Below are positions 18,194 through 64,000 of a stretch of DNA of 64,000 bases, piece by piece. The DNA lies in contig NC_058132.1 in NCBI RefSeq assembly GCF_016433145.1, positions 408,732,356 through 408,796,355 of the forward strand, read 5' to 3'. The position numbers were made by a program, and so were the translations under genes. Below the pieces are notes generated by a model, which worked only from the letters and a program-made list of their open reading frames with translations, did not search any database and was not told the origin of the DNA. Every line of letters begins with the position of its first letter. Position 1 is the first letter of the stretch. The stretch is from Gracilinanus agilis (lineage: Eukaryota).

Positions 18194-18366
18194 NNNNNNN
18201 NNNNNNNNNNNNNNNNNNNNNNNNNNNNNNNNNNNNNNNNNNNNNNNNNNNNNNNNNNNNNNNNNNNNNNNNNNNNNNNNNNNNNNNNNNNNNNNNNNNN
18301 NNNNNNNNNNNNNNNNNNNNNNNNNNNNNNNNNNNNNNNNNNNNNNNNNNNNNNNNNNNNNNNNNN
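18194..18366. other. Assembly gap (N run)
   Basis: One of five gaps; the others are 27640-27768, 34049-34419, 45649-45780 and 51694-51847. Confidence 1.
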
Positions 18367-21280: not shown

Positions 21281-22610
21281 ATCTCCTCTTAAGAACATCT
21301 TGATCACTCCAGCTCCCAGAGGTGATCTCTGCAGCTAGCCATACCACTCAGGGTATAGTTGCAAGATTTTAGAGATGCACCTGACATACCACCAACTGCT
21401 CAATATTCACTTTTTTATCTATTTATTCTGTCTCCCAAAAGCAATTGTGAACTTCTTGAGGGCAGGGAACTGTGTTATACTTCTTTGTTTATTCCTCCTC
21501 CTCTCAGATCAGAGACTAGTTGAATGTTTTGCACATACTGTATGGAAGTACTCGGTCAATAGTTGTTGTTTGAGCATTACCTACTCCTCATCTTACAATG
21601 AAATCAACCTCGCCCCCAAATATTCCTTGTCATTCATACCCTGGGATCACAAGCTGCTGAGGTATCAGCCCCAGTTTTTTTCTTTTCACTAACTGATGAG
21701 GTTCATTTGTTTGTTTGTTTGTTTGTTGTTGTTGTTTTTATTCAAAGATATTTTATTTTCTCAATTGTGTGCAATGATAATTTTCCTCATATGTTTTCCA
21801 AAATGATCAAATCCAAATTGTCTCCCTCCCCCCCTTCCATTCCCTGATGAGGTTCATTTGATCACTAGTCCCTGGCTCAAGGAACAGTTTCCACCTGTCC
21901 TACTAGGTCTTTAGTGATTGATTATCTCGTTGGATCTGTGATTAGCTGCATCATCATTTGCTCCAGCTGTTCCTAATGGCTATCTTTATATGCATTTTTT
22001 CCCCTTCTCAGTTAAACTCTGAGGATACTGCTTATATGAAGTACTTCTACTTCCTTTCCTTTCTTTAATGATCAATTCTTCGTAGTTTGGCTTCTTTGGT
22101 AATCTTTCAAGAAAAATTGCTCTCTCCAAAGTTACCAATGATCTTTTCATTAGCAAATCTAATGGTCTTTCCTTCAACTCCACTCTTCTTGACTTCACTG
22201 CCTCTTTTGACATTGTTGACATTGTCAACCACCCTGTTTTTTCTTCAGATCAAAGTATACTTTGTAAAAATTTTCTTTATTTTTCTGTTTTCTCTTATAA
22301 CATGACCAATATGAAAATGTTTTATATGATTGCACATGAATAACCTATGTCATATTGCCTGCCTTCTCAATGAGGCGATAGGGAAAGAAGGGAGAGAATT
22401 TGGAACTCGAAACTTTTTTTAAAGAATGTTTAAAATTGTTCCTACATGTAATTTGAAAAATAAAATAATTTTTTTAATCTTCATGTAAAATTTATCAATC
22501 AGCTCTCTAGACCCTGTAGGAACTGGCTCCAGTGTACTGGCCATAGCACCAGGACTCCAGCAGCAGCCTCACAGGTGCCTACAAACAAGACAAAGCAGTG
22601 GCCTCATAGA

Positions 22611-26161: not shown

Positions 26162-28400
26162 CACAGTTGATCATTTTGATTATCGTGATCAATATTATAT
26201 TTTTGTTATCATATATATTGTTTTCCTGGTTCTGCTCATTTCATTTTGCATCAGTTCATAGAAGTCTTTTCAGGTTTTCCTGCATTTAGAACAAACAGAA
26301 TAAGTTCATCATTTCTTATGGTGCAGTAGTATTTCATTATAACCATATACTTCAACTTGTTTATCCAGTCCCCAAATGATGAATAACTCCTCAGTTTTCA
26401 ATTATTTGCCATTACAAGGAAAGCTGCTAAAAATATTTTTGAACAAGTAGGTCCTTTTCCCTTATCTCTGATCTCTTTGGGATACAGGTAAATCTGGGTC
26501 AAAGGGAATACATAGTTCTATGGCCTTTGGAACCTGGGTCCATATTGTTCTCCAGTATGGTTGTATACTCACAGTTACACCAACAGTGTATTAGTGTCCC
26601 AATTTTCCTACACCTCTTCCAATATTTATCATTTTCCTTTTTAGTCACGTTACCCAGTATGATAGGTATGAGGTAGCATCTCAGAGTTGTTTTAATTTTC
26701 ATTTTTCTCATCAAAAATGGTTTGGAACAATTTTCCATGTAACTATACATAGTTTTAATTTCTTCTTTTGAGAATTGCCTGTTCATATACTTTGACAATT
26801 TTTCAACTGGGGAATGTTTTCTATTCTTACAAATTTGACTTTTTGTTCTTATAAATTTGACTCAGTTCTCTATATATTTGAGAACTAGAGGCCAATGTCA
26901 GAGATATTTGCTATAATTTTTTTTCTAAATTTGTTGTTTTCCTTCTTGATTGCATTGGTTTTGTTTGTGCAAAACCTTTTTACTTTAATATAATTAAATT
27001 TATAAAATTCATTTTTATAATATTCTCTGTGTCTTGTTTGGTCATAAAGTCTGTTATTCAGTTGTTCACTGTAAAGTATTCCTGTCACAATACACAATGT
27101 TCTCCTGGTTCCATTTATTTCCACTTGTCATTTCCTATAGTACAATAGTATTTAATTAAATTCATGTATTACAATTTATTCAGACATTCCCCAATTGATG
27201 GACATCAAATCTGTGCCCCCCTAAAAAAAGCTGCTCTAAATATTTTTGTACATATATGCCCTTCCCTTTTTTATCTCTTTATGATGCAAATCAAGTAATA
27301 GTATTGCTGGGTCAAAGAATATATACTATTTTATAGCCCTTTGGGCATAGATCAGGATTGCTCTCCTGAATGATTGCATCAGTTCATAAAGCTCCCAAAA
27401 ATGCATTTGTGTCCCAGATTTCTCATATTCCTTCCAAATTCTGTCATTTTCTTTTTCTATCATTATAGCTAATCTGATAAGTATAAGGTGTACTTCAGAG
27501 TTGTTTTGATTTGCATTTCTCTAAATAATATTGATTTAGATGATACATGTAACAACCCAATGGAATTGTGCATTGGCTACGGGGGGTTGGGGAGTTTGGG
27601 GGAGAGGGAAAGAACATAAAACATGTAACTATGGGAAAANNNNNNNNNNNNNNNNNNNNNNNNNNNNNNNNNNNNNNNNNNNNNNNNNNNNNNNNNNNNN
27701 NNNNNNNNNNNNNNNNNNNNNNNNNNNNNNNNNNNNNNNNNNNNNNNNNNNNNNNNNNNNNNNNNNNNTAGAACATTTTTTTTGCATGATTACCAAGAGC
27801 TTTAGTTATTCTGTTTGAGAACTGCCTATTCATATCCTCCGGGATATTGGAGAATGACTTTTACTCTTATATAATCAATTCATTTTTATTTATATTTGAG
27901 AAATGAGGCCATTATTAGAGACTTGTAAAAATATTTTGCACCATTATGATTGCTGTGTATTGCTTTCCTTCCTATTTACCCCTATTTAGTTTCTGACCTC
28001 CATATCCCCCAATTTACCCTCTTTTCTACCAGCCTTGCCCTGTTTCTCTTATCCCTTTCCCTTCCTATTTTCTGTAGAGTAAAATAGCTTTCTATACCTA
28101 ATTGATTGTGTGTGTGTTCCTCCCTCATTGAATCAATTCTTATGAGAGTAAGGATCACATGCTCTTCTCCCGACCTATTTTCCCCTCCATTGTGAAAATG
28201 CTCTTTCATGCCTCTTTTATGTGCAATAATTTACCCCATTCTATTTTTCCCTTCCAATGGATTCCTCTTTCTTATGCCTTAATTTAATTTAATTTTTTTA
28301 TATCATCCCATCATATTAAGCATGCACCTTTGTCCTCTCTGACTTCTAACTACCCTAATAATGACAAAATTCTTTGGTGTTACAAGAATCATCTCCCCAT

Positions 28401-33738: not shown

Positions 33739-34719
33739 CCAAAAGAAAATGTTCCACTCTTCTCAATTTTCCTGTTAATTTTAAAAGTATTTCCATTCCT
33801 GAGCCAGACTCAGGACCTTGGTGGTATTCCCAACACCCCTCAGTTGGGTTTAACTGCAGCCAGTTCCCTGGTAACATAATTGATACTAGAATAAAACAAG
33901 ACACTTGTAAGTCAACTAAAATTTAAAAAATGATTTACTCAGGAATAGCAGAAGGAGATTCAAGGATATGCATTAAGATAACTGCAAACTGATTCAACTG
34001 GATGAAACTCCCTTGCCTGAGTTGTCCATCATCTTCCAATCATGCACTNNNNNNNNNNNNNNNNNNNNNNNNNNNNNNNNNNNNNNNNNNNNNNNNNNNN
34101 NNNNNNNNNNNNNNNNNNNNNNNNNNNNNNNNNNNNNNNNNNNNNNNNNNNNNNNNNNNNNNNNNNNNNNNNNNNNNNNNNNNNNNNNNNNNNNNNNNNN
34201 NNNNNNNNNNNNNNNNNNNNNNNNNNNNNNNNNNNNNNNNNNNNNNNNNNNNNNNNNNNNNNNNNNNNNNNNNNNNNNNNNNNNNNNNNNNNNNNNNNNN
34301 NNNNNNNNNNNNNNNNNNNNNNNNNNNNNNNNNNNNNNNNNNNNNNNNNNNNNNNNNNNNNNNNNNNNNNNNNNNNNNNNNNNNNNNNNNNNNNNNNNNN
34401 NNNNNNNNNNNNNNNNNNNATCTCTGATCAGAACCAGGGAGACAATGCTCTTATGGCCCCCACACAAAATCATATGTATACACAACACCACCACATGGAG
34501 CTAAGCTCTCTTGGAGTCTCTCTAGACTGTTTTTACTCAGGTTGCCAGGAAATGACATCAAAAGCCTGAATGTTTAGTCCTCTAAGCCACTCAACTAATA
34601 CCTTTTAAGGAAAAATAGGCTACCTTAATTTGGGAGAAGGCTTAGATTATTACTTACAAGATAGTGCTGAGGTCCTTAAGGTTTTCTACAGGACTTTCTA
34701 ATGTTTAAAAATGACTTGA

Positions 34720-43500: not shown

Positions 43501-46500
43501 CAGAATCCAGTACAGTCCCTTGCACATAGCAGGTAGTTGACAAGTGCTTGTTTAATTAAATTGAATCAAATTATGTGACTTGCTCTCAGCTGAAGTAAGT
43601 AAATAAAGAGAGTCAGGACTTTCAATCCATGCTTTTCTGATTCCTTGTCTAAAACTCTTGCTACTCCTAAATGGTTATCCAGATATTCTTGGAAGGGAGA
43701 ACACATTAATTAAATCCCTTCCTGAGAAGTGTTTTTTGTAAGAGAGGAGAGGGAGTATAACCACTGGATACCTGAGGGGTGGCAGGAATAAGAGGAATCA
43801 TGGTGGAAATGGGAGAGCAGAGAAAGGAAAGAAACAGTTGGCTAGGGATGAAGGGCAGAGTTTAATGGAAAGGATGTTCAACTTCATCAAGAGAAACCTG
43901 GGATCCAACACTCGATTGCTATGTGATCATCACTGAGCTGAATTTTCTCATCTGTAAATGAGAGAAAGGAAGGAATGGAAAAAGCATTAAATTCTGAGCC
44001 AAAGTATCAGAGTTTAAGCTTCAACTCTGCTATTCATTACTCATCTAAGTTTTCTTATCTGTCAAATGTTCAGATTGGATCTCCTTTCCAACTCTAAATT
44101 TATGATTTGATATTTGTTGTAGTCTTTTTGTATGACTATTTTAAGGATGTGATATGATGGTTCATATAAAATTGTTTTATGTCTCTTAAATCACTATATG
44201 TCAACTTTTATTTGGGTGGCCTAAGGAAAAAACTAAGTACATCATTTCTCTGTTTTCCTTTCCCTTCTTTCCCTTTCGGGTATAGAGAAAGGATAAGAGC
44301 TAATTCCCTTCAGGGTATAAAGAGCACAGTTATCACAGAATTTTAGAGTTGGAATGAACCTTGAACACTCCTCTCAGAACAAAAGAAAAATTTCGAGTGG
44401 GAAGTCAGTGAGGCATAATGAATAGACTTGGTCTTGGAATCATGTAGCCTTGGGCTTAAGTCAAGAGCCTGACACATAGTAGTTATATGACTCAGGGCAA
44501 AATTTTAATGTCTCGATACCCCTAAATGACTGTCTAAGGCTATAAGTTGCTGATCTACATTGTTCCTGGGAGTTCCTTGATGAGGTGTTCCCTACATTAA
44601 TGGAACCATAGATCTGGACCTACCCCAAGAGAAACAGAATTGAGACATATCTCTCTAACTCTTTCACTGGCTACTGAACCCTTCCTCTCCTTCCCCAGCA
44701 TTTAATTCAGTGGCAATTACTTATAAGAACTCAGTAACTGATGCTGCATTAAACCAACTTCATTTAATGGCAGTCTTCCTCAGGGTACTAAAGAAACCAC
44801 TCACCACCAGAGAAAGTATGTTGCTAAAATGTGTGCCATTAGTTCCCTGCTTTTCCCAGAGATCAAACCTCTCATCTCTGAGAAACAATCGGGACAAGGC
44901 ATGAGAGTAACACAGTGGATGAGCCCTGCAATATTCCAAGCTGATAACTCTTAATTATCTAAATTCTATTTCTCCAACAGTTCTCTTTCAGGAAGAAAGG
45001 GAAAGAGTTGGGAAACAATTCTTTCCTTAACTGCTCTCTGGAAAGTCTTCAGACTGCCTGTTTCTTTCCTCCTGGTGGTCTAATCTGGAGTCAGCTCCAG
45101 CCACGAACTATTAAAAATGGCTAAGAACTTCAAGCCAAAAGGGAAAACAACAGGTGAGATTATGAACAGTCCCCTTCTGTGTCTACAACAGGGTGTCTAA
45201 CTGGCCAAACGGAGGGGGTGCTTTGACTTAGAGAACCTCCTGCCTTTGCAGGTGTTTTAGGGACTTGGCCACAGTGCTTCAGTGACCCATATTTTATTAC
45301 CTTTCGGGTTTCTATAATTCATCATTCATTCCTTTCTGAAAACATAGAATGAAAGTTGAGCAGCTCAGTGCCCCTGTCTCTTTCCATTCTCTCCCCTAGT
45401 ACATTCGGCTTGTTTGTTCTCTTTCATTCCAGTTCTTCCTGTCGCATTTTGCCCATTCAATAGAGAAATAGTGAAACCGGATGGCTGGATTCAGTACAGG
45501 GAAATGACTTCAGAGCTACCTTTGTTTTGCCCCCTCATTTCTTTGAGCACACTTGGCTGTGGGTCTCTATGAAAGGGCTTGTTTAAACCATTTGGAACAT
45601 CCAGTAAGCAAAAGATGCATAAGCCAGACTCACTCACATCTTTTCAGGNNNNNNNNNNNNNNNNNNNNNNNNNNNNNNNNNNNNNNNNNNNNNNNNNNNN
45701 NNNNNNNNNNNNNNNNNNNNNNNNNNNNNNNNNNNNNNNNNNNNNNNNNNNNNNNNNNNNNNNNNNNNNNNNNNNNNNNNGCATTTGGCTTCAGCTACTA
45801 ACTTCAGGAAGGTTCAAAAAATATTTTTGTTCTGCAGAAAACCAGCTCTTGAGACATCAAGGGATATGCGCTAATTTTCATGATTTTTAAATGAATGGAA
45901 ACATTTTTCCTCACTGAAATACCTTTATTTCCCTTCTCTTTCTCCACATACCAATCTTGCATTTATTTTTGCCGTGAATTAAGTGATCTCCTATCTCCTT
46001 AGAAAATAAAGTCACATACTTCTCCCCTGAAAAAAAACTAATCTCAAAAATTATTTTGATGTTTTCTTTAAATAGTATGAACATAGAAATAGAGTCAACA
46101 AAGGACTATATTCAGAAACTAATTTTCATAAAAATATAATAATATTTATGAAGGTGATATGTAGCATTTTAGCTAGGAGTGTCTAGAAGAGGGACAAATA
46201 TAATCATTTTTGTTTTAATACCCCAAAAAAAAAGTCAGCCCATCTGCTGATCTTTACTCTGTCAGTGATCTTAAGTCAAACTCTTGTTTTAAACACATAC
46301 ATAATAATACAGATCTTGCTTAGTAACACAAAAACAACCACTATCTCTAGATTTTAGAATACAAGGAAGGGTCATATTCATGATGAAGTAGAAAAAATTC
46401 TGTCTTCAGGGTCATTGGGTCAAGTCTAACTGTGCCCACTTATGGTGTCACCTTGGACAAAACTCCCAGGGCCTCGGCTTCCAAAAAATGAGAGAGATGT

Positions 46501-51395: not shown

Positions 51396-52184
51396 CAGGC
51401 ATACCTTGAAGATATTTCAGGTTTGGCTCCAGCCTACCACAACAATAGAAATATCTCAATAAAGTAAGACACACAAAATTTTTGGTTTCCCAGTGCATCT
51501 GAAAGTTGTGTTTATACTAGATTATAGTCTATTAAGTGTGCAACAGTATTGTGTCTGAAAAAATGTGCATACCTTAATTTAAAATACTGTATTGCAAAAA
51601 AAAAACAAAGTTTACATCATCTGAGCCATCAAGTCATAATCTTTCCTGGTGGAGGATCTTGCCTTGTTGCTGATGGCTGCTGACTTGTGGGTGNNNNNNN
51701 NNNNNNNNNNNNNNNNNNNNNNNNNNNNNNNNNNNNNNNNNNNNNNNNNNNNNNNNNNNNNNNNNNNNNNNNNNNNNNNNNNNNNNNNNNNNNNNNNNNN
51801 NNNNNNNNNNNNNNNNNNNNNNNNNNNNNNNNNNNNNNNNNNNNNNNCTGAGGAAAGTGAGTCAGAGGAGCAATCAGAACATACATAACATTCATTGATT
51901 AAGTTGGCTGTTTTATATGGGAGCAGTTTGTGGCACCCCAAAATAATTACAATAGTAATTATGATCACTGATCACAAATTATCATAACAGATGTAACAAT
52001 AACAAAAACATTTGAAATATCATGAGAATTACCAAAATGTCACCAAGAGACATGATATGAGCAAATGCTGTTTAGGAAAATGGTTCTAATAGATTCGTTC
52101 AGATAAGGGTTGTATCAAACCTTTGATTTATGATTTTTTAAAAAAAGCAATATCTGGAAAGATCAATAAAATGAGGTGTGTCAA
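51396..52184 (-). mobile_element. Tigger1-like Tc1/mariner transposon, internally deleted (spans a gap)
   Basis: TA then caggcataccttgaagatatttcaggtttggctccag at the left; gcaatatctggaaagatcaataaaatgaggtgtg at the right; both resemble recalled Tigger1 termini. Confidence 0.8.
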
Positions 52185-55299: not shown

Positions 55300-55739
55300 G
55301 CTCTCTTCTTTCTCCTTCCTGGAGAATCGTATCGCGTGATAGCCTGAACCCCGGCGAGAGAATCACACAGTTTCTCAACAATAAACTATTTCAACAGTGC
55401 CAAAAATCACCTCTACACCCCCCAAGTTCCCCCTCCCAACTCGCAGCGACGTGTGCGCCCCAGCCAATGAGAGCCTGCCTCAGCCCAGGCTCTAGACCCA
55501 GTTGGTTCTTTTCTTTTCCCCAAGTTCAAGAGCTGGATTTAAAGGACCTCAAGTCACTAACTTCTTCGCTATATGCCCCTCTCCCAGCTTCCACAAGCAG
55601 CGGTTCCCGCAACCAGATAGATCTTGGGAGCAAGGAAGGTTCGCAAAACACTCTGCGCGCTCTTGAAGTGTGGACTCTTTGTCATCTTTGCCAGGAGCTT
55701 GGAAACCCACCCAACCCCCCCACGAACGAGAACGCGAAG

Positions 55740-55790
<51 letters not shown>

Positions 55791-55903
55791 TCACTCACTC
55801 ACTCACTCACTCACTCACTCGTTACCACGCTTCTCCTACTTTCCCTGCACACCCTTTTTACTATGAAGGTTTCTAAGCTCATTTGAAAGTAGCCGTGCCT
55901 AAG
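55300..55903 (+). promoter_or_regulatory. OLIG1: OLIG1 proximal promoter / 5' leader (CpG-enriched)
   Basis: CpG density rises abruptly from about 55325. NF-Y-type CCAAT box AGCCAATGA at 55462-55470, weak TATA-like CTATAT at 55569-55574. TSS cannot be determined from sequence. Confidence 0.6.
55743..55820. repeat. Compound microsatellite (AC)n(TCAC)n upstream of OLIG1 ATG
   Basis: About 22 AC units followed directly by about 8 TCAC units. Confidence 0.98.
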
Positions 55904-56632
55904 ATGTTGAGGCAACAACGACCGGGGGATGTGCAGCTCGGGGCTTCCCCGTATGAGTTGATGGGCTATAGGCAGCAGCTGTCTTCTTCCTCTGGCACTG
56001 CCACCTTCCTTCCTAAGCAAGTCCACGAGAAGCTGGAGCCACCTCTCGAGCAGCTCCAGCAAGGCGTGGGAAAAAATGCCAAGGGTGGCAGCGGCTGCGG
56101 CGAGAGCGGAAGCAGCAGCAGCAACAAGACAGAGCTGAAGGAAGAACAGCAGCAGCTGAGGAGAAAAATCAACAGCCGGGAGAGGAAAAGGATGCAAGAT
56201 CTCAACCTGGCCATGGACGCTCTAAGAGAGGTGATAATGCCCTATTCTGCCGCCCACTGCCAGAGTTCCCCCGGCAGGAAGCTCTCCAAGATCGCCACGC
56301 TGCTCCTTGCCAGAAACTACATCCTTCTTCTGGGCAGCTCCCTCCAGGAGCTGCGGCGGATCCTGGGCGAGATGAGCGGGCCAGGGCCGCGGCTGCTACT
56401 CGCCGGCTTGCCCCTGTTCGCCGCCCCGGGTTCGGTGCTGCTGGCCCCAGGGGGCGTGAACCACCCGGAGACTCTACACTCCAGCAAGTACCTGTCGCTG
56501 GAGGAGCCGCCGTGTGGCCAGTTCCCTCTACCCGGCAGCCCTGGTCTGTGTACCTGTGCTATCTGCAAGTTCCCGCATTTAATTCCCTCAGGCCTCGGGC
56601 TCGCTGCGGTACAGACACAGTTCTCCAAGTGA
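55904..56632 (+). CDS. OLIG1: Oligodendrocyte transcription factor 1 (bHLH), single exon, 242 aa
   Basis: [27 protein letters not shown]...[68 protein letters not shown]...[11 protein letters not shown]...AAVQTQFSK. The bHLH with the AAHCQ loop and the QFSK C-terminus are diagnostic of OLIG1 rather than OLIG2/3. The track start at 55883 is TTG; the first in-frame ATG is 55904 (A at -3), with an in-frame TAA at 55874-55876. Confidence 0.97.
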
Positions 56633-58125
56633 AGAGACTGGGCAGACCCCGTTGCACCCCTCTTCCCTTTTCCTTCCCGAGCTTGCCACCCCGTCACCAC
56701 TGCCTCCTTGATATGACTGCCACCCTCGCCCCTTTGCCAGTCCCAGCTCCCCGGAGCCATCTGCAGCACAGAAAGATCGCGGGGGTCGAGAGAGGTGTGA
56801 GACTACCGAAAGAAAGAGATGGAGGCTCTTTAAGGGAGGGTTGGAGACTTCCTCCAAGTACATTTGCAGTTATGGGGACGTGATGAGTGAAGAAACAGTG
56901 TAAGATATTCGTTTTGGAGTTCTGAGGGCGATCTTTCCGGGTAGATTTCCTGCTTGCTAGCGGGGTAGCTTAAAATAAAGAGTGGAGCCAGATCTCTCCT
57001 ATCCATCCCTCTTCTCTCCTGACCCCTCCCCGCTCCACCCCTCCCTGCCCCGAAGGATGTAGATCTAGCTAACTTTTTCTTGTCCTTCCCTCCATCACTA
57101 AATGTTTGTTCATATCTCTTCTTTTGCTTGCAAGAAAGCAACCCTTTCCTCGGCTCCAGTAAGCCATCCTCGGGTGTTTATGTTATGAGAAGTGGGTGTC
57201 AGGGGGGTGGGGTTCTTTTCCCTCCAGAAAGAGAGAATAGCAGCCTTTGTGTCTACTTTTCACTAGCTTCGGACGGACTCTTCGAGGGGAATGTGCTTCG
57301 AGGATTGGAACGAGGAATCCTTCGGGTTTCTGGAAGACTTCTTAATAGGGACAGAATCACAGACTGCTACGTGTGAACTTTCGCCCAACGAGTTGGTTAG
57401 GCGGCGGGTGGGCTGAGTCTCTGCAAAGGGCTGAGGGTGAGCAAGCTTGATAACTGCCTTCACGAATTCAAATCTTGTTGGAAATGCTGGTCTCGGACGA
57501 TGTTTACTTTCTTTTGAAACCAGCTCATTATTTTTCAGGGAACCTCACAGGTTTTTAGGTGTAATCTCTATTTTGTTTAATGTTTGTTTGTTTGTTTTTC
57601 CCCCTGGCCGTTGCTATTCATTCTTTTAGGAAAGGAAACGAAGAGCTGTCCACTTTCGCCAGTTTTTCAGGTTAGCCTAACCAGCATTTGACTTTAGTAT
57701 ACATTCGTATAATGCCCTTCCTTCAAGCAACAGTTTTCTTAGATTACTGAAAATAAGTACAGTCCTCTCATACTCTGATTTAAAGGGGGGGAAAGAATTC
57801 GATTAACTTGTATTTCATTAAGAAAGACAAAAGCGATCAGTGCAGTTTTCTTGTAGGTCCATTCTGGGAAATGGATTCTAACAGAAGTTTTAATAAAATC
57901 ACAGCCATGTTTCTTCCATTTACTCCATATTAGAGTACATAGATTTCAGGTCTTGATTTGTAATGGGCATTAAGTATTCTTTTTTTTTTAATGTCAGGAT
58001 ATGACTTTGGATTTTTATTGTTGGGAATTTTGTTGTTAAAAGCCCATTTTAAAACTAACCTTCTTTCCTTCTTGTATTGTTGAATCATCACAATAAATAA
58101 ATAAAAACATAAACAACTACTTGAC
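56633..58125 (+). other. OLIG1: OLIG1 3' UTR (inferred)
   Basis: Repeat-free sequence after the stop codon, ending at overlapping AATAAA hexamers with a downstream GT/T-rich tract. Confidence 0.6.
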
Positions 58126-58137
58126 TTGTCTGTATTT
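58092..58137 (+). terminator. Polyadenylation signal cluster
   Basis: AATAAATAAATAAA at 58092-58105 (three overlapping AATAAA), then cttgacttgtctgtattt; a further AATAAA at 57892-57897. Confidence 0.6.
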
Positions 58138-59399
58138 AAAGATTTCTTCTGGACATGATTCTAAATCTATGAAGGAATACTAGACGATAAAATGACTGAC
58201 TTTGCATTTAAAAAGACAGAACATCACACACAGAGAGGTTTGTTGTTGTTGTTTTTTTTTTTCTTTTTAGTTTGGATAGATAAAGTATCAGGTGAGAAAT
58301 TGGCAACAAGATGGAAGTGGAGGGCCAAGAAATTCTAATCCCCACAGTTCTATTAAATCATTGCCCAAGTTCAGCAGGCAACCATCTCCCAAATGTTTTT
58401 CACCTGGAATATAGGTTGTAAGATAAACTTATTTTCAACTCATTTTGGGTGCCAATATCTGCTTTATCTAAGTAGACAGTAATTATCTTGAAGAGCTAAT
58501 CTATGATTTCTTTTCTATGACTTTTATAACCAGCTTTGGCTGATATATCAGTAAATTAAGACATTTGTTTTTCATTAATACTTTTAAAGGGAAAGAGAAA
58601 TTTCTGTCTCAAAAACCAGTTAATAATGTGACTTGGCATATGTTACAGTTCACATTTTATTGTCAACTCCCAAACGTACAGAACACTGAAATATAATGAA
58701 GTGACTTAGGATCACATAGCAGATTATTCATGTTGATATTACCAGGTCATGCTACTAAGTGATTATTCTTTCTAAAGTTATTTCTCAGTGGGCCAATTAT
58801 AAAGGGCAATCTGAGCTTTATAGATTGTAAAGGGTTAAGAGTGGGGGAAAAGGTATCAGATTATTTTCCCTTCATGCTAACCAAGAACCACCTTCCTGAC
58901 TAAATGAGAAAAAGAGAAATGGGACAGAGGTTGCTAAACCACTCCATCTCATAATCTTGATTATCTTTTTCCTCAGACTTTGGTACTTCTAGTCACCCTG
59001 TAACTAGAAATTACTAGCTTTTAAAATATAATTCTATCTCTTCTACACCTTCAAAAATTAACATTAAAAATAACCCAGTATAGGAATCAAATAGAGAAAT
59101 TGAGCACAATAACTGAAAACAATCAAACTGGAATGAAATTTCTAAAAAATTGAATTCACATGAGCTCTCTCCTACAGCTCCAATAGACATTTATTAAATT
59201 CTTAAATAATTGAATTGGAAACAAGATGTTGGGCAATGGAGAAACAAAAAATAATTAAGATATGGTCTCTACTTGAACTGATAAGCTGATGGATATTGTA
59301 TGGCATGACATCATACCTTCAAGGACTGACTTGATCTTCATAAAGGAAAAGGAGGTTAGGGGAGAAGAATGAACTGGTGTTCTCTTTGCCCCTAATTAC

Positions 59400-60250
59400 C
59401 TCAAAAGCAAAGAATGCACTATTGCCTCTCTTATGGGAGCTTTGGTACTATATTTACAACCTTATTGGCCAGGAGAACACAAATCTCATTGCACTTAAGA
59501 CGGTCAAAGACTATTTTAGACAGAGGTAGGTAGGTTAAATTTAAGCACAACAAAATAGTTTTAAGGATCATTTGAAGGAATTGGACATATTCAGCCCAGA
59601 GAAAAAGAATCACATGGAAGGTGGTGGCTGGGCATGACTGCAATATTTAAATATTTGGAACTCCGTCATGTGAAAGAGACCTTGGATTTGTTTGGCCTCT
59701 GTAGCAGACCATGTCTGATTCAGACTGGTCTGGTAGCTCGAGTTCAAGACTGAAATGAAGTTAAGACTGTCAGAGAGACTGCTAAGTGGCTCAATGAAGT
59801 AAAAGCCAGGCCTAGATATGGGAGGTCCTGGTCAAATCTGATCTCAGACACTGAGCCCATCCACTCTACTGCCTTGGATAGAAGGTAAGGGTTTTAAACA
59901 AACAAAAAGTCATAAAATATCTGATACTTAATAAAAGGTTTACTTAGCCCTAGCAAGAGACATTTGGCAAAGAAATAGTAGTGATTTAGCTGGGCATACT
60001 TTGCCTGCCTCTTTATTGCCCACTGTGGTCCCTGAACCAGAAAGGTAGGTGATTCCTTCTGCACTAGATTTTTTTGTACTTGGGTCCTAAGAAAGGGATT
60101 TAGACTTCAATGGCCAAATTTCAGTCCCAGAGGAGCCCTGGAAGGTTGAATTAGAAGCAATGAGTAGAAGTTGCATTTAGGCTACTTGAAGCCTGATGCA
60201 AGGAAATAGCTTCTATGTCAAAGTGCAATAGACTGCCTGGAGATGTAGGT
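59400..60250 (+). mobile_element. CR1/L3 LINE fragments, interrupted by a SINE at about 59775-59910
   Basis: aaggaattggacatattcagcccagagaaaaag...gcaatatttaaatatttg and atagactgcctggagatgt motifs. Confidence 0.6.
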
Positions 60251-60269
60251 GGTAACCCATCATTTTTCA

Positions 60270-60460
60270 GTTGTGTCCCAACTTTCTGTGACTCTCTTTG
60301 GGGTCTTCTTGGCAAAGATACTGGAGTACTTTGCCATTGCTTCTCCATCTCATTTTACAAGAAGAAGAAACTGAGGCAAGCAAAGTTAAGTGACTTGCCC
60401 AGAGTCACACAGGTATTAAGTGTCTGAGGCCAGATTTGAACTCAGGAAGAGTTTTAGAAT
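60270..60460 (-). mobile_element. MAR1-type CORE-SINE
   Basis: rc tail tcttggcaaagatactggagtactttgccattgcttctcc followed by CORE. Confidence 0.75.
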
Positions 60461-60744
60461 AAAGACAAGTAGTATGGTGAATAGGACCCTGAACCTATAA
60501 TCAGGAAGACCTGAGTTCAAATTCTGTCCTTAAATACTTACTAACTTACGGCATCCCATGCAAATCATTGTCTATGCCTAAGTTTCTTCATCTATAAACT
60601 AATGGAGTTGGACTTGTTGGTCTCTAAGGTCTCTTCCAGCTTTAAATCTATGATCCTTTGACTATTATTCTATTGGAAGAAATAATTACTGAAAATATAG
60701 TAAGGGAAAGAACACAAACTGTTGCAAAGTAAACATAATTAGAA

Positions 60745-60990
60745 CTTTTGTAGTTGTTCAGTTTTTTCCTTTGTGTCCAACTCTCTGTGACTCTGTTTGG
60801 AGTTTTCTTGGCAAAGATACCCAAGTGGTTTGCTGTTTCCTTCTCCATCTCATTTTACAGATGAGAAAACAGAGGCAAACAGGGCGAAGCAGCTTACTCA
60901 AAGTTTCACAATTGCTAAATGTTGGATTGATCTCAGGAAATGAGTCTTCCTGACTTCAGGCTCAGCACTCTATCCATGGTGCCATCTAGC
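60745..60990 (-). mobile_element. MAR1-type CORE-SINE
   Basis: rc tail ttttcttggcaaagatacc...tttgctgtttccttctcc, CORE and head. Confidence 0.75.
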
Positions 60991-62584
60991 CTCAGCAAAC
61001 AACAAATATGACCATTACTCCTATAAACCTAAGAAATAGATGGGGTGGCATGAGGTTGGAGATTGACCCTGCCATAATTATAATAATCATCATTATGCCC
61101 AAGTCGTCAAGTGTTTTGCTACTGTAGTGTAAGGCAAGATTTGGAAAAACAAATTGGAAAAACCAATCCCCCTCAAATACTTTAGTATAAAAGGTGGTGA
61201 CCATTAAAGCATGTGCACTAAGGTGTTTTATGAAAGTATATGCCATGGACTGAAGCTATGAATGTTTTTATTATGCACCAGTATTGTGTCAAGCTTAACC
61301 TGAAAGCACTGAAAATCTAAATTTAATAGAAATTCCAAAAATGTTACCTAATAATGAAACATAATTGGTCTCTATTTGGAATCATTAGTGTCCTCATCTT
61401 TTGATGTCTTCTTTTAAGAACTATGGGATCAGATATGGCTTACATCAGAGAGGGAGCTGGCAAAATGCTTTCATAAACATTCATGTGTCACTGGAAAACT
61501 ATGTCTTGACTAAAAAGCATTTGAGCCAATAAATATGAATTTTCTTTAGACATGTAGCTTTCTAGTTTTGGAAAGAAATTAGACTTTGTCAACATTCTGT
61601 TCATCATATTAACAGTATATGAGATTTCTGTTTCTCATTTGATTGCATCTGTCTTCTTCTGACCAGATAAACAACTAGAAAATTTTAATTTCCTCATTCT
61701 TTGGGTATCGAAATTGAACTATCCATTTTCTTATTTCCATTGATTTGGCTCCTTATTACACTGAAACCTCTTAAACTTTTGCCTTTAATTATTGATTAAT
61801 TGTATGAAGACTCTGATATATTTTATATATTTTTATTCCATTCTACATCTCTTTTTATTTGTCCTTAAGCGATATGATGCTTAAGCTTTCTAATGAGAAT
61901 AACAGCTAGATATTGCTATTATCTTCCAGTGTCTTGCTATGGGTCTTCAAGATGGTATCTGACATTTGCATTGTGGAACATTCCTAGAGAGCATCACCTT
62001 TCTCTCTATGGTTCTTACATAGCCATTGGCCATAGAATATATCCTTTGGTGCATGTGCTGAGGTATTTTTATATTCTCTGTCAAATGTTGTAGGAGGATG
62101 CATGCTGGATATAGCAGATATCAGCTTTCATGAATCACATGGAAATTACATGCAGATATCACTCAGATCTGTGCATATCCAGAGAACACAACAAGGGAGT
62201 AAGGCAAACTAGCAATATATTATTAGGCTTATAAAACAACAGAATACACCAAGGCACTAATATATATGAAAATACAGAAACAGTACAACTCATAATTATA
62301 ATACTTGTACAACACTAATGTACTATTTACCACATATCGCAAAATAATGACAGCAAGTCATGAAGAAATTATGGCACATCAATAAACACAAAATTGAATA
62401 CAAGGCACACATTGCATGGATAAACATTTGTATTGTCATCTGATTTCATGTGTAACAACTTCTGGTTAATCTGGATATAGTCATGTAGGGTCTAGTTTTA
62501 TTATGACTTGCTAATCTCTCTGCCCCTATACTTGAACCAGTTGATGGCACACACTAATAAAAATCCTCATCAAAATGATAGTCT

Positions 62585-62750
62585 TGCATTCAATCAATCA
62601 ACATTTATTAAGTACCTACTAAATACCAGGTACTCTGCTAATCAATGGGGATAGAAAAAGAAGTAAAAGTCATTTCCTGCCCTCAAGAAGCTTACAGCCT
62701 AATAAGAGAGATAAAACACAAATAAACATATACAAATATATTCCTAAATC
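62585..62750 (-). mobile_element. L2 3' end fragment
   Basis: attcaatcaatcaacatttattaagtacctact...ctgccctcaagaagcttacag. Confidence 0.75.
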
Positions 62751-63039
62751 TAAACTTATAGAGTGTGTAGGCTGATTATTTGTATTACTAGATGCCATTA
62801 AGTGCCCCTCTGTGGATAAAGTTCTAACCAGGAAAGGTACTACCTCTCTCCTTGCTGGAATTGGTCTGCTGGATTACAGTACTCACTGTCTTCTTTACTA
62901 CAAATGTTATTCCCTAGGCCACTGTGTGGTTCGGAAAGTCTTTGTACTGATAGCTTTTGTTTTTAGAGTTTACTGCAATAAATGCCCATCACTTGTCTCT
63001 TCCTGCCATATAATAAGGGAGTCCACCTATCTCTTCTAT

Positions 63040-64000
63040 GAACAATAAGTGGTCGCAATAAGCTGTCTTTAATCAGTCCCCTCCAGGCTCTGGGGTCATT
63101 ATATATAAACAGGCAAACTGTCCAGGCTCCACAACTAAACATGGAGTAGCTTTCTGTCTGTCTGCTATTTTGGATATACCTTGAATACCCAGTCTCTCAG
63201 CACTCCATCTATTTGTTGGAGGTCTTGATAATGAGCTTGAATATCATGCCATTGCTTGTTTCAGGCAGAGTTCTTCTAAACTAAAGACAAGGCTAACTGC
63301 AAGGCATTTTTCAGTTTACTTCTATGCTGAAATGTTCTGTTGTGAGAATTTGCATTCTCCATCCTCTGAAACTCAAGAAACACAAGTCAAAGTGTACACA
63401 GGATTCTCACTCGAACATGAGCAAGTATAATGTAAAACCTGTAATCATTAATGATGAAGTTCTACACTTGTACTACAAATGGCACATGTTGACTCCACTG
63501 AGGTCTTTGTTCTGGTCTCAATGCTCCTAATATGTTCGACAAGCACACAGGCTGGGGCCACTTTTGTAGATCATAATATAAACTTCATGCTTGCAACATC
63601 AATCATGTCCTTGGGTAAGTTTGCTCTCAAAGTTTCTATCTTGGTCAGAATGTATCTTGACCAAAAATCCATACCCTGAGAAATAATCCCACAATAATTT
63701 TGCAATCTGAATGCTTTCTGGCCCTGATTATGCATATTTGATGAAATAAACAACTACTTCTAAAATATTACTTATGTTGCTACAATCTCCTTCCCGGAAA
63801 AATGTTAAAGATCAGTTCTAAAGATTTGATAGTATTTACATTCTCTAGATTCTTTGCTTGAGTTGTTAGCACCTTTCTTTGAACAAAGTGAACTCAGATG
63901 TCTCCCTTCTTTGTGACATCTGCTGCTATCTAGGACCAGTAAAATCCGCTTCTTATTAGCTCCAAAGTTCTCTTGGCCTTTTTGTTCAAAATCAATAATG
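63040..64000 (-). mobile_element. Fossil Ty3/Gypsy LTR retrotransposon pol, integrase region (runs off window end)
   Basis: Minus-strand translation across frameshifts gives collinear integrase motifs: RTLELIRSGFYWS*IAADV; LENVNTIKSLELIF; NILEVVVYFIKYA; QIAKLLWDYFSGYGFLVKIHSDQDRNFESKL (IHSDQ..KL at 63655-63617); LGALRPEQRPQWSQHVPFVV (63530-63471); TGFTLYLLMFE*E; LGIQGISKIADRQKATPCLVV (63192-63130); DHLL (63054-63043). Confidence 0.9.

What the first reader, a model, noticed from the sequence alone, without database searches (positions are those of the whole stretch)
63040..64000. Fossil Ty3/Gypsy integrase about 5 kb downstream of OLIG1, hidden from the ORF track
Seen: about 320 codons on the minus strand that, read across frameshifts, give in order RTLELIRSGFYWS*IAADV (zinc-finger region), SLELIFNIF (first catalytic Asp position, apparently lost), NILEVVVYFIKYA, IAKLLWDYFSGYGFLVKIHSDQDRNFESKL (second Asp kept), YDLQKWPQPVCLSNILGALRPEQRPQWSQHVPFVV (the ERFNRT segment carrying the catalytic Glu looks deleted), TGFTLYLLMFE*E (GPY/F-like), then LGIQGISKIADRQKATPCLVV and DHLL. 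Established: mammals have no active Ty3/Gypsy elements, only old relics (MamGyp families) and domesticated genes such as PEG10, RTL1, GIN1 and NYNRIN. Inference: the motif wording is closest to fish/amphibian-type Gypsy integrases as I recall them, so this may be a marsupial Gypsy lineage missing from standard repeat libraries, either an ancient therian relic or a later invasion.
Basis: partly seen in the sequence, partly recalled or inferred. Interest (0 to 1): 0.8.

Follow-up and report, generated by a model that had tools for sequence, protein, structure and literature searches.

The report
Dead Ty3/Gypsy integrase relic near OLIG1
The last kilobase of this marsupial window is a heavily decayed, non-functional integrase gene from an ancient Ty3/Gypsy retrotransposon; this kind of relic is already known in mammals, so the finding is real but ordinary.

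Summary
On the minus strand, 63016-63977 and on to the window edge at 64000, lies a broken integrase.

- **Match:** Natural fish Ty3/Gypsy Pol proteins align in three collinear blocks: zinc-binding H2C2 region, rve catalytic core and C-terminal module. The tblastn sum E is 1.4e-18. A frameshift-aware alignment scores 323, against 41±5 for shuffled proteins.
- **Damage:** There are 10-11 in-frame stops and 8-10 frameshifts. The first catalytic Asp is lost, the second is kept in an HSDQ motif, and the segment carrying the Glu is missing.
- **Host:** The window's OLIG1 clusters only with marsupial OLIG1 proteins.
- **Family:** The nearest relatives are a fish Gypsy family, some of whose members carry a PNMA-type Gag. 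By inference this is the Gypsy12_DR / MamGyp-int lineage, whose remnants are already reported in eutherians and marsupials.
- **Age:** The decay implies roughly 0.2-0.45 substitutions per site. That points to a Mesozoic insertion, not a recent invasion.
- **Not testable here:** RT and RNase H beyond base 64000, LTRs, copy number, orthology in other mammals, and any match to Dfam or Repbase.

First readers of this scan noted two other Gypsy-type fossils elsewhere in this genome; neither has been checked.

Verdict: a real but ordinary fossil, a new member of a known kind.

The parts
63016..64000 (-). Whole visible integrase fossil. It is cut by the window edge at 64000, so the RT and RNase H side would lie beyond the window.
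   Evidence: Frameshift-aware alignment to P0177 residues 937-1270 covers 63977-63016: 318 codons, 38.7% identity, 10 frameshifts and 10 stops. Score 323 against a null of 41±5. tblastn sum E 1.4e-18.
63870..64000 (-). Remnant of the N-terminal H2C2 zinc-binding domain (PF17921 type). Zinc ligands are not retained: the second His position reads Asn, the first Cys codon is now a stop (63896-63894), and the second Cys position reads Phe in the straight frame.
   Evidence: It maps to the Pfam Integrase_H2C2 span 917-972 of P0177. The tblastn HSP has 45% identity over 56 aa. This part alone gives z=22.5. Residues were read.
63553..63830 (-). Remnant of the rve (DDE) catalytic core. The first Asp is lost, the second Asp is kept at 63646-63644 within HSDQ, and the ERFNR stretch with the catalytic Glu is absent.
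   Evidence: It maps to the Pfam rve span 986-1083 of P0177. The tblastn HSP has 41% identity over 66 aa. Residue map. This part alone gives z=27.6. The 42-aa core piece hit Gypsy Pol proteins in a search of 1.84 billion representatives, at E 5.7e-5 and 1.6e-4.
63016..63552 (-). Remnant of the integrase C-terminal module (TGF..Y.LMF motif, then the region ending in a ..DHLL motif).
   Evidence: tblastn HSP of P0177 residues 1095-1253 to 63542-63078. This part alone gives z=13.3. There is no similarity to the Pol tail beyond it (z=-0.9).
55904..56632 (+). OLIG1 coding sequence (context only). The fossil lies 6.4 kb downstream of it, on the opposite strand.
   Evidence: ORF with an OLIG-type bHLH. 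The exact 242-aa product sits in a 90%-identity cluster made only of marsupial OLIG1 proteins.
62590..62800 (-). SINE-like insertion just below the fossil (context only; limits are approximate).
   Evidence: Direct reading. The core motif was found twice in the window against 0.01 expected.

Best explanation
This is the decayed 3' part of the pol gene, the integrase, of an ancient Ty3/Gypsy (Metaviridae-type) LTR retrotransposon. It inserted antisense, 6.4 kb downstream of OLIG1, in an ancestor of this marsupial.

When the element was alive, this protein would have bound the ends of the reverse-transcribed element DNA and joined them to chromosomal DNA. It would have done so with its H2C2 zinc domain, its DDE core and its C-terminal module.

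The copy is now dead and does nothing as a protein. It has 10-11 stops and 8-10 frameshifts, has lost its zinc ligands and its first Asp, and lacks the segment that carried the catalytic Glu.

By similarity it belongs with a vertebrate Gypsy lineage whose living fish members carry a PNMA-type Gag. That is the Gypsy12_DR-like / MamGyp-int lineage, which also gave rise to the mammalian PNMA genes.

Shown here: homology, domain order, the damage, and the marsupial host. Inferred: LTR-retrotransposon origin of this particular copy, lineage assignment, great age, and neutrality.
For: - **Homology:** Three collinear tblastn HSPs to natural Gypsy Pol proteins give sum E 1.4e-18, and nothing else in the window matches. 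The frameshift-aware score is 323 against a null of 41±5. Each domain part is significant alone.
- **Unbiased search:** The 42-aa core piece, searched against 1.84 billion representative proteins, gave only Gypsy-type Pol or rve proteins as true hits (P0002, P0004, P0006). No retroviral integrase appeared. The ESM Atlas neighbours are rve clusters.
- **Architecture of the matches:** The best-matching proteins have PR-RT-RNase H-H2C2-rve order.
- **Family ranking:** The 119 proteins of the P0049-like family score 246-336. The second fish/amphibian Gypsy family scores 113-186, and an arthropod element scores 116.
- **PNMA link:** Members of the best family carry Pfam PNMA Gag. P0237 matches at E 8e-20, and PF14893 is listed for 8 proteins.
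- **Age:** The stop count and the retained amino-acid identity fit about 0.2-0.45 substitutions per site.
- **Host:** The host is a marsupial.
- **Presence in relatives:** Related organisms A and B hold about the same small share of 31-mers for the fossil (0.05-0.07) as for a flank 5 kb away (0.04-0.07). That fits single-copy DNA inherited with its surroundings and no extra conservation.
Against: - RT, RNase H, gag and LTRs of this copy were not seen. The window ends inside the zinc domain, and nothing recognisable follows the integrase.
- No target-site duplication could be sought.
- Single stop-free pieces give no Pfam hit and no PDB hit.
- The lineage assignment rests on the Gag of fish relatives, not on this copy.
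- Dfam and Repbase consensus sequences (MamGyp-int, Gypsy12-I_DR) could not be compared.
- The age range is wide, and it depends on an assumed original identity to the fish relatives and an assumed neutral rate.
Confidence: 0.85

Rival explanations
1. It is a fossil transposase of a Ginger/GIN-type DNA transposon. These carry a Gypsy-like H2C2 + rve + GPY/F integrase but no reverse transcriptase.
For: The domain content visible in the window (H2C2, rve, C-terminal module) is shared by Ginger/GIN elements (PMC5753468, PMC3424704). The RT side that would settle the matter lies outside the window.
Against: All the strong matches, at 39-45% identity in the conserved blocks, are Pol proteins with RT and RNase H upstream of the integrase. 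No Ginger or GIN sequence was available for a direct comparison.
Confidence: 0.04
2. It is a pseudogene copy of a host gene that was itself derived from a Gypsy integrase, of the NYNRIN, KRBA2 or GIN1/GIN2 kind.
For: Such genes exist in therians and marsupials (PMC9447858, PMC3424704).
Against: GIN2 sits between OGFOD2 and ABCB9 and has eight coding exons (PMC3424704), whereas this stretch is collinear without introns and lies next to OLIG1. The similarity to active fish elements runs through all three integrase modules up to the window edge, as expected for a pol gene.
Confidence: 0.05
3. It is an endogenous-retrovirus integrase fossil, not a Gypsy one.
For: ERVs are by far the commonest source of integrase relics in mammals. 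First readers noted several ERV-like features elsewhere in this genome (unchecked).
Against: The search of all representative proteins returned no retroviral integrase at E<0.001. The N-terminal part matches the PF17921-type H2C2 domain of Gypsy Pol with z=22.5.
Confidence: 0.02
4. The Gypsy origin is right, but the relic has been exapted as a regulatory or other conserved non-coding element of the OLIG1/OLIG2 locus.
For: Ancient TE protein fossils are often found conserved near developmental genes (PMC9004415), and OLIG1 is such a gene.
Against: Related organisms keep no more 31-mers of the fossil than of a nearby intergenic flank. The damage fits free decay. Neither OLIG1 nor OLIG2 appears in the one held supplement of PMC9004415; that file also held no occurrence of 'Gypsy', so it probably does not list the fossils at all. 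This is weak evidence only.
Confidence: 0.08

Closest known systems
Fish Ty3/Gypsy elements of the P0049/P0177-like family. They are annotated 'Gypsy retrotransposon integrase-like protein 1' or 'Pol polyprotein' in Astyanax, Oreochromis, Dallia and others. Some members have a PNMA-type Gag.
   Same: The order H2C2 - rve - C-terminal module is the same. Identity is 38.7% over 318 aligned codons, and 41-45% in the two N-terminal blocks. Shared local motifs include RTL.L.R..F.W, MAADV/IAADV, HSDQ, and TG..PY.LMF/TGFTLYLLMF.
   Different: The fish proteins are intact and part of full PR-RT-RNase H-IN polyproteins. The window copy is broken by 10-11 stops and 8-10 frameshifts and lacks the Glu segment. 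Its upstream domains are out of view.
MamGyp-int / MamGypLTR relics and the Gypsy12_DR-related remnants and PNMA genes of mammals (PMC5753468, PMC9934673, PMC3789554).
   Same: These are also ancient, dead Ty3/Gypsy material in a mammalian genome. The link runs through the PNMA-type Gag of the nearest living relatives. Remnants of this lineage have already been reported in tammar wallaby and opossum.
   Different: Those reports concern Gag, whereas this is an integrase remnant.
Pre-amniote Gypsy protein fossils of the human genome (Frith 2022, PMC9004415).
   Same: It is the same kind of object: a frameshifted, stop-ridden Gypsy Pol fragment that is found only by protein-level comparison.
   Different: Those fossils were dated by orthology across vertebrates, and many are under constraint. 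Here the age is only estimated from decay, and there is no sign of constraint.

Membership tests
Ty3/Gypsy (Metaviridae-type) LTR retrotransposon integrase | N-terminal H2C2 zinc-binding domain (PF17921 type) directly upstream of the catalytic core | tested here: met
   Homology to the H2C2 span of P0177 is clear: 45% identity, z=22.5. The zinc ligands themselves are mutated.
Ty3/Gypsy (Metaviridae-type) LTR retrotransposon integrase | rve-type DDE catalytic core | tested here: met
   Homology to the rve span is clear: 41% identity, z=27.6. Only the second Asp survives; the first Asp and the Glu segment are lost. It is therefore a member by descent, not by activity.
Ty3/Gypsy (Metaviridae-type) LTR retrotransposon integrase | C-terminal GPY/F-type module after the core | tested here: met
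   There is a collinear third HSP, and this part alone gives z=13.3. Identity is low, at 26-30%.
Ty3/Gypsy (Metaviridae-type) LTR retrotransposon integrase | Integrase placed after RT and RNase H in one pol gene (order PR-RT-RH-IN) | not testable with these tools
   The window ends at 64000 inside the zinc domain. Three look-ups for contigs that extend it found nothing.
Ty3/Gypsy (Metaviridae-type) LTR retrotransposon integrase | Flanking LTRs and a target-site duplication | tested here: inconclusive
   No direct repeat of LTR kind lies within 56000-64000. The 5' LTR would lie outside the window, and an LTR this old would not be recognisable alone.
Ty3/Gypsy (Metaviridae-type) LTR retrotransposon integrase | Closer to Gypsy integrases than to retroviral or other DDE integrases | tested here: met
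   The search of 1.84 billion representatives returned only Gypsy-type or rve hits plus three chance hits to repeat proteins. Ginger/GIN proteins were not compared directly.
Gypsy12_DR-like / MamGyp-int lineage (source of the PNMA genes) | PNMA-type Gag in the same element | not testable with these tools
   The Gag of this copy is out of view. The nearest family has PNMA Gag in several members, while none of the 120 listed proteins of the more distant family does.
Gypsy12_DR-like / MamGyp-int lineage (source of the PNMA genes) | Direct sequence match to the catalogued MamGyp-int or Gypsy12-I_DR entries | not testable with these tools
Domesticated integrase-derived host gene | Open reading frame kept intact | tested here: not met
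   There are 10-11 stops and 8-10 frameshifts in about 320 codons.

The most novel reading that the evidence does not exclude
The relic may belong to a burst of Gypsy12_DR-like retrotransposition in the marsupial stem lineage, after the split from eutherians. That would be the same wave proposed to have produced PNMA-MS1. It would then represent autonomous pol-bearing copies that are not in current repeat libraries. The Gag and Pol fossils that first readers noted elsewhere in this genome could allow that wave to be dated.
Probability: 0.25. Interest if true: 0.35.

Novelty: new member of a known kind. Interest (0 to 1): 0.2.

Why it matters
The finding matters little on its own. It is one more dead copy of a class of ancient Gypsy relics that is already known in mammals.

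Its modest value is that it preserves integrase sequence rather than Gag. The marsupial literature on this lineage has looked only at Gag. Dated together with other copies, it could help to say when autonomous Gypsy12_DR-like elements were last active in the marsupial line. That would bear on whether the marsupial and eutherian PNMA genes arose from separate waves.

It also shows that the scan's ORF track misses such fossils.

Tried and rejected
- **Pfam on pieces:** Pfam scans of ten stop-free pieces gave nothing relevant; the pieces are too short.
- **PDB:** A phmmer search with the core piece gave only chance hits to SF3B4.
- **Chance hits in the representative search:** Three of the six hits (P0001, P0003, P0005) are chance matches to internally repeated or ankyrin proteins, whose score is summed over repeats. 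I rejected them after Pfam and direct reading.
- **Extending past 64000:** Three look-ups of window ORFs in public assemblies found no record. The contig of P0006 was uninformative.
- **Read laying:** So no read-level check of organisms A and B was possible.
- **MAFFT with pieces:** Aligning the short pieces with natural integrases misplaced some pieces, so I did not use that alignment.
- **Other scans:** Rfam and tandem-repeat scans of the surroundings found nothing.
- **Human fossil list:** The one held supplement of Frith 2022 mentions neither OLIG1 nor OLIG2. It also holds no occurrence of 'Gypsy', so it probably does not list the fossils.
- **Artefact in my alignment:** Two of the ten frameshifts, at 63894 and 63884, look like a detour around the stop at 63896-63894. 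I therefore give ranges for the counts.
- **Unused search:** I did not use the third large protein search, because its answer would not have changed the verdict.

Full report
**Observation.** I read 62400-64000 on the minus strand and translated all three frames. The ORF list shows nothing longer than 78 aa in 62000-64000, so the feature is indeed invisible to an ORF track. Stop-free pieces are at most 42 aa on the relevant path.

**Is it more than chance?** Single pieces were too short for Pfam and for a PDB sequence search. I searched the 42-aa core piece (63602-63727, minus) against 1.84 billion representative proteins. It gave six hits at E<0.001.
- Three are Gypsy-type or rve proteins. 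One is P0002, whose close relatives are fish Gypsy Pol proteins, at E 5.7e-5. One is P0004, a pseudoscorpion Pol, at E 1.6e-4. One is P0006, a short rve fragment. In P0004 the match falls inside the Pfam rve span.
- The other three are internally repeated or ankyrin proteins whose score is summed over repeats. On inspection they are chance hits.
- No retroviral integrase appeared.
- The ESM Atlas placed the piece among rve clusters.

**Reaching closer relatives.** I collected natural relatives in two steps and ran them against the window with tblastn. The best, P0177, gives three collinear HSPs.
- Residues 937-992 map to 63977-63810.
- Residues 1000-1065 map to 63793-63611.
- Residues 1095-1253 map to 63542-63078.

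The sum E is 1.4e-18, and no protein hit anything else in the 64 kb at E<0.01.

**Frameshift-aware alignment.** I wrote a protein-to-DNA alignment that allows frameshifts, and compared P0177 residues 900-1300 with the raw DNA without building any joined peptide.
- It covers 63977-63016, with 318 codons at 38.7% identity, 10 frameshifts and 10 in-frame stops.
- It scores 323. Twelve shuffled proteins give 41±5, the reversed protein 37 and the other strand 37.
- The zinc-domain part, the core and the C-terminal part are each significant alone, with z of 22.5, 27.6 and 13.3. The Pol tail beyond the integrase finds nothing.

**Anatomy and damage.** Pfam places H2C2 at 917-972 and rve at 986-1083 of P0177, after protease, RT and RNase H. 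Mapped to the window, this gives three parts.
- **H2C2 remnant:** about 63870-64000.
- **Core:** about 63553-63830.
- **C-terminal module:** 63016-63552.

The window edge cuts the zinc domain: the first His position would lie just past 64000.

In the straight reading the second His position is Asn. The first Cys codon is now a stop (63896-63894) and the second Cys position is Phe. The first catalytic Asp is not kept. It reads Asn in the straight frame and Thr on the path my alignment chose. The second Asp is kept in HSDQ at 63646-63644. The five residues ERFNR that carry the catalytic Glu are a gap.

Two of the ten frameshifts in my alignment, at 63894 and 63884, look like a detour around a stop. 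The honest counts are therefore 8-10 frameshifts and 10-11 stops. The protein cannot be made, and it would be inactive if it were.

**Which family?** The best-matching proteins are full Gypsy-type Pol proteins named as such by their sources. I ranked 231 natural proteins by the frameshift-aware score.

| Group | Proteins | Score range |
|---|---|---|
| P0049-like fish family | 119 | 246-336 (median 285) |
| P0002-like fish/amphibian family | 106 | 113-186 (median 144) |
| Pseudoscorpion element (P0004) | 1 | 116 |

Several members of the better family carry the Pfam PNMA Gag domain. P0237 has it at residues 114-257 with E 8e-20, and PF14893 is listed for eight proteins. One of these, P0218, is among the top scorers. 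None of the 120 listed members of the other family has it.

The literature ties the PNMA Gag to Gypsy12_DR-like elements (PMC3789554). It ties the PNMA2 ORF to the Gag of the catalogued MamGyp-int relic (PMC9934673), and MamGyp-int and its LTRs are listed among human repeats (PMC5753468). I therefore infer that the fossil comes from that lineage. This step is an inference from relatives, because the Gag of this copy is not in view.

**Host and setting.** The ORF at 55904-56632 (plus strand) is OLIG1. Its exact 242-aa product lies in a 90%-identity cluster made only of marsupial OLIG1 proteins: glider, devil, dunnart, wombat, koala, opossum, antechinus and possum. The fossil lies 6.4 kb past the stop codon, on the opposite strand. 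A SINE-like insertion sits just below it, at about 62590-62800. No LTR-like repeat, tandem repeat or Rfam family is nearby.

**Age.** I ran a simple simulation of neutral substitution on random sense codons.
- Ten stops in about 320 codons correspond to roughly 0.35-0.45 substitutions per site, with wide Poisson error.
- The retained identity gives 0.2-0.3, if the element was 60-75% identical to its fish relatives when it inserted.

With mammalian neutral rates of about 1.5-2.5e-9 per site per year (my own knowledge, not tested here), this means very roughly 100-200 million years. That favours an old relic over a recent invasion.

Public runs of two related, coded organisms hold a small share of the fossil's 31-mers (0.05-0.07). 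They hold the same share of a flank 5 kb away (0.04-0.07). This fits single-copy DNA inherited with its surroundings and gives no sign of extra conservation.

**What it is and how it works.** The most likely account is that a Gypsy12_DR-like LTR retrotransposon inserted here in the Mesozoic and has decayed freely since. Only the integrase end is visible in this window. It has no present protein function.

The rivals are a Ginger/GIN DNA transposon, a pseudogene of a host integrase-derived gene, an ERV, and exaptation as a regulatory element. Each is addressed under rival explanations. None is favoured, but the first two could not be excluded by direct comparison.

**Novelty.** Ancient Gypsy fossils are documented in mammals (PMC9004415, PMC5753468). 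Gag remnants of this lineage have been reported in tammar wallaby and opossum (PMC3789554). This is a new copy of a known kind. Whether it matches a catalogued family could not be tested here.

First readers of this scan noted a Pol fossil in a DOCK3 intron and a PNMA-like Gag fossil elsewhere in the same genome. I did not check them.

Noticed in passing
window 62590-62800 (-) and about 21447 (+): A SINE-like element with the core GTAAGCTTCTTGAGGGCAGG lies just below the fossil. A second, more diverged copy of the core is at 21447. That makes two matches against 0.01 expected.
   Followed up: partly
window 55467-55886 (+), upstream of OLIG1: A (CA)n-type microsatellite reads as a run of TH repeats in an upstream ORF translation.
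   Followed up: no
window 60278-60334 and 60777-60833: Two 57-nt direct repeats, 84% alike, lie 499 bases apart. They are probably two copies of an interspersed repeat.
   Followed up: no
P0049, P0002 and P0004 (database proteins): These predicted Pol proteins each contain a duplicated integrase or RT segment. They look like models run across nested or tandem element copies.
   Followed up: no
window 18194-18366, 27640-27768, 34049-34419, 45649-45780, 51694-51847: There are five runs of N, 959 bases in all.
   Followed up: no
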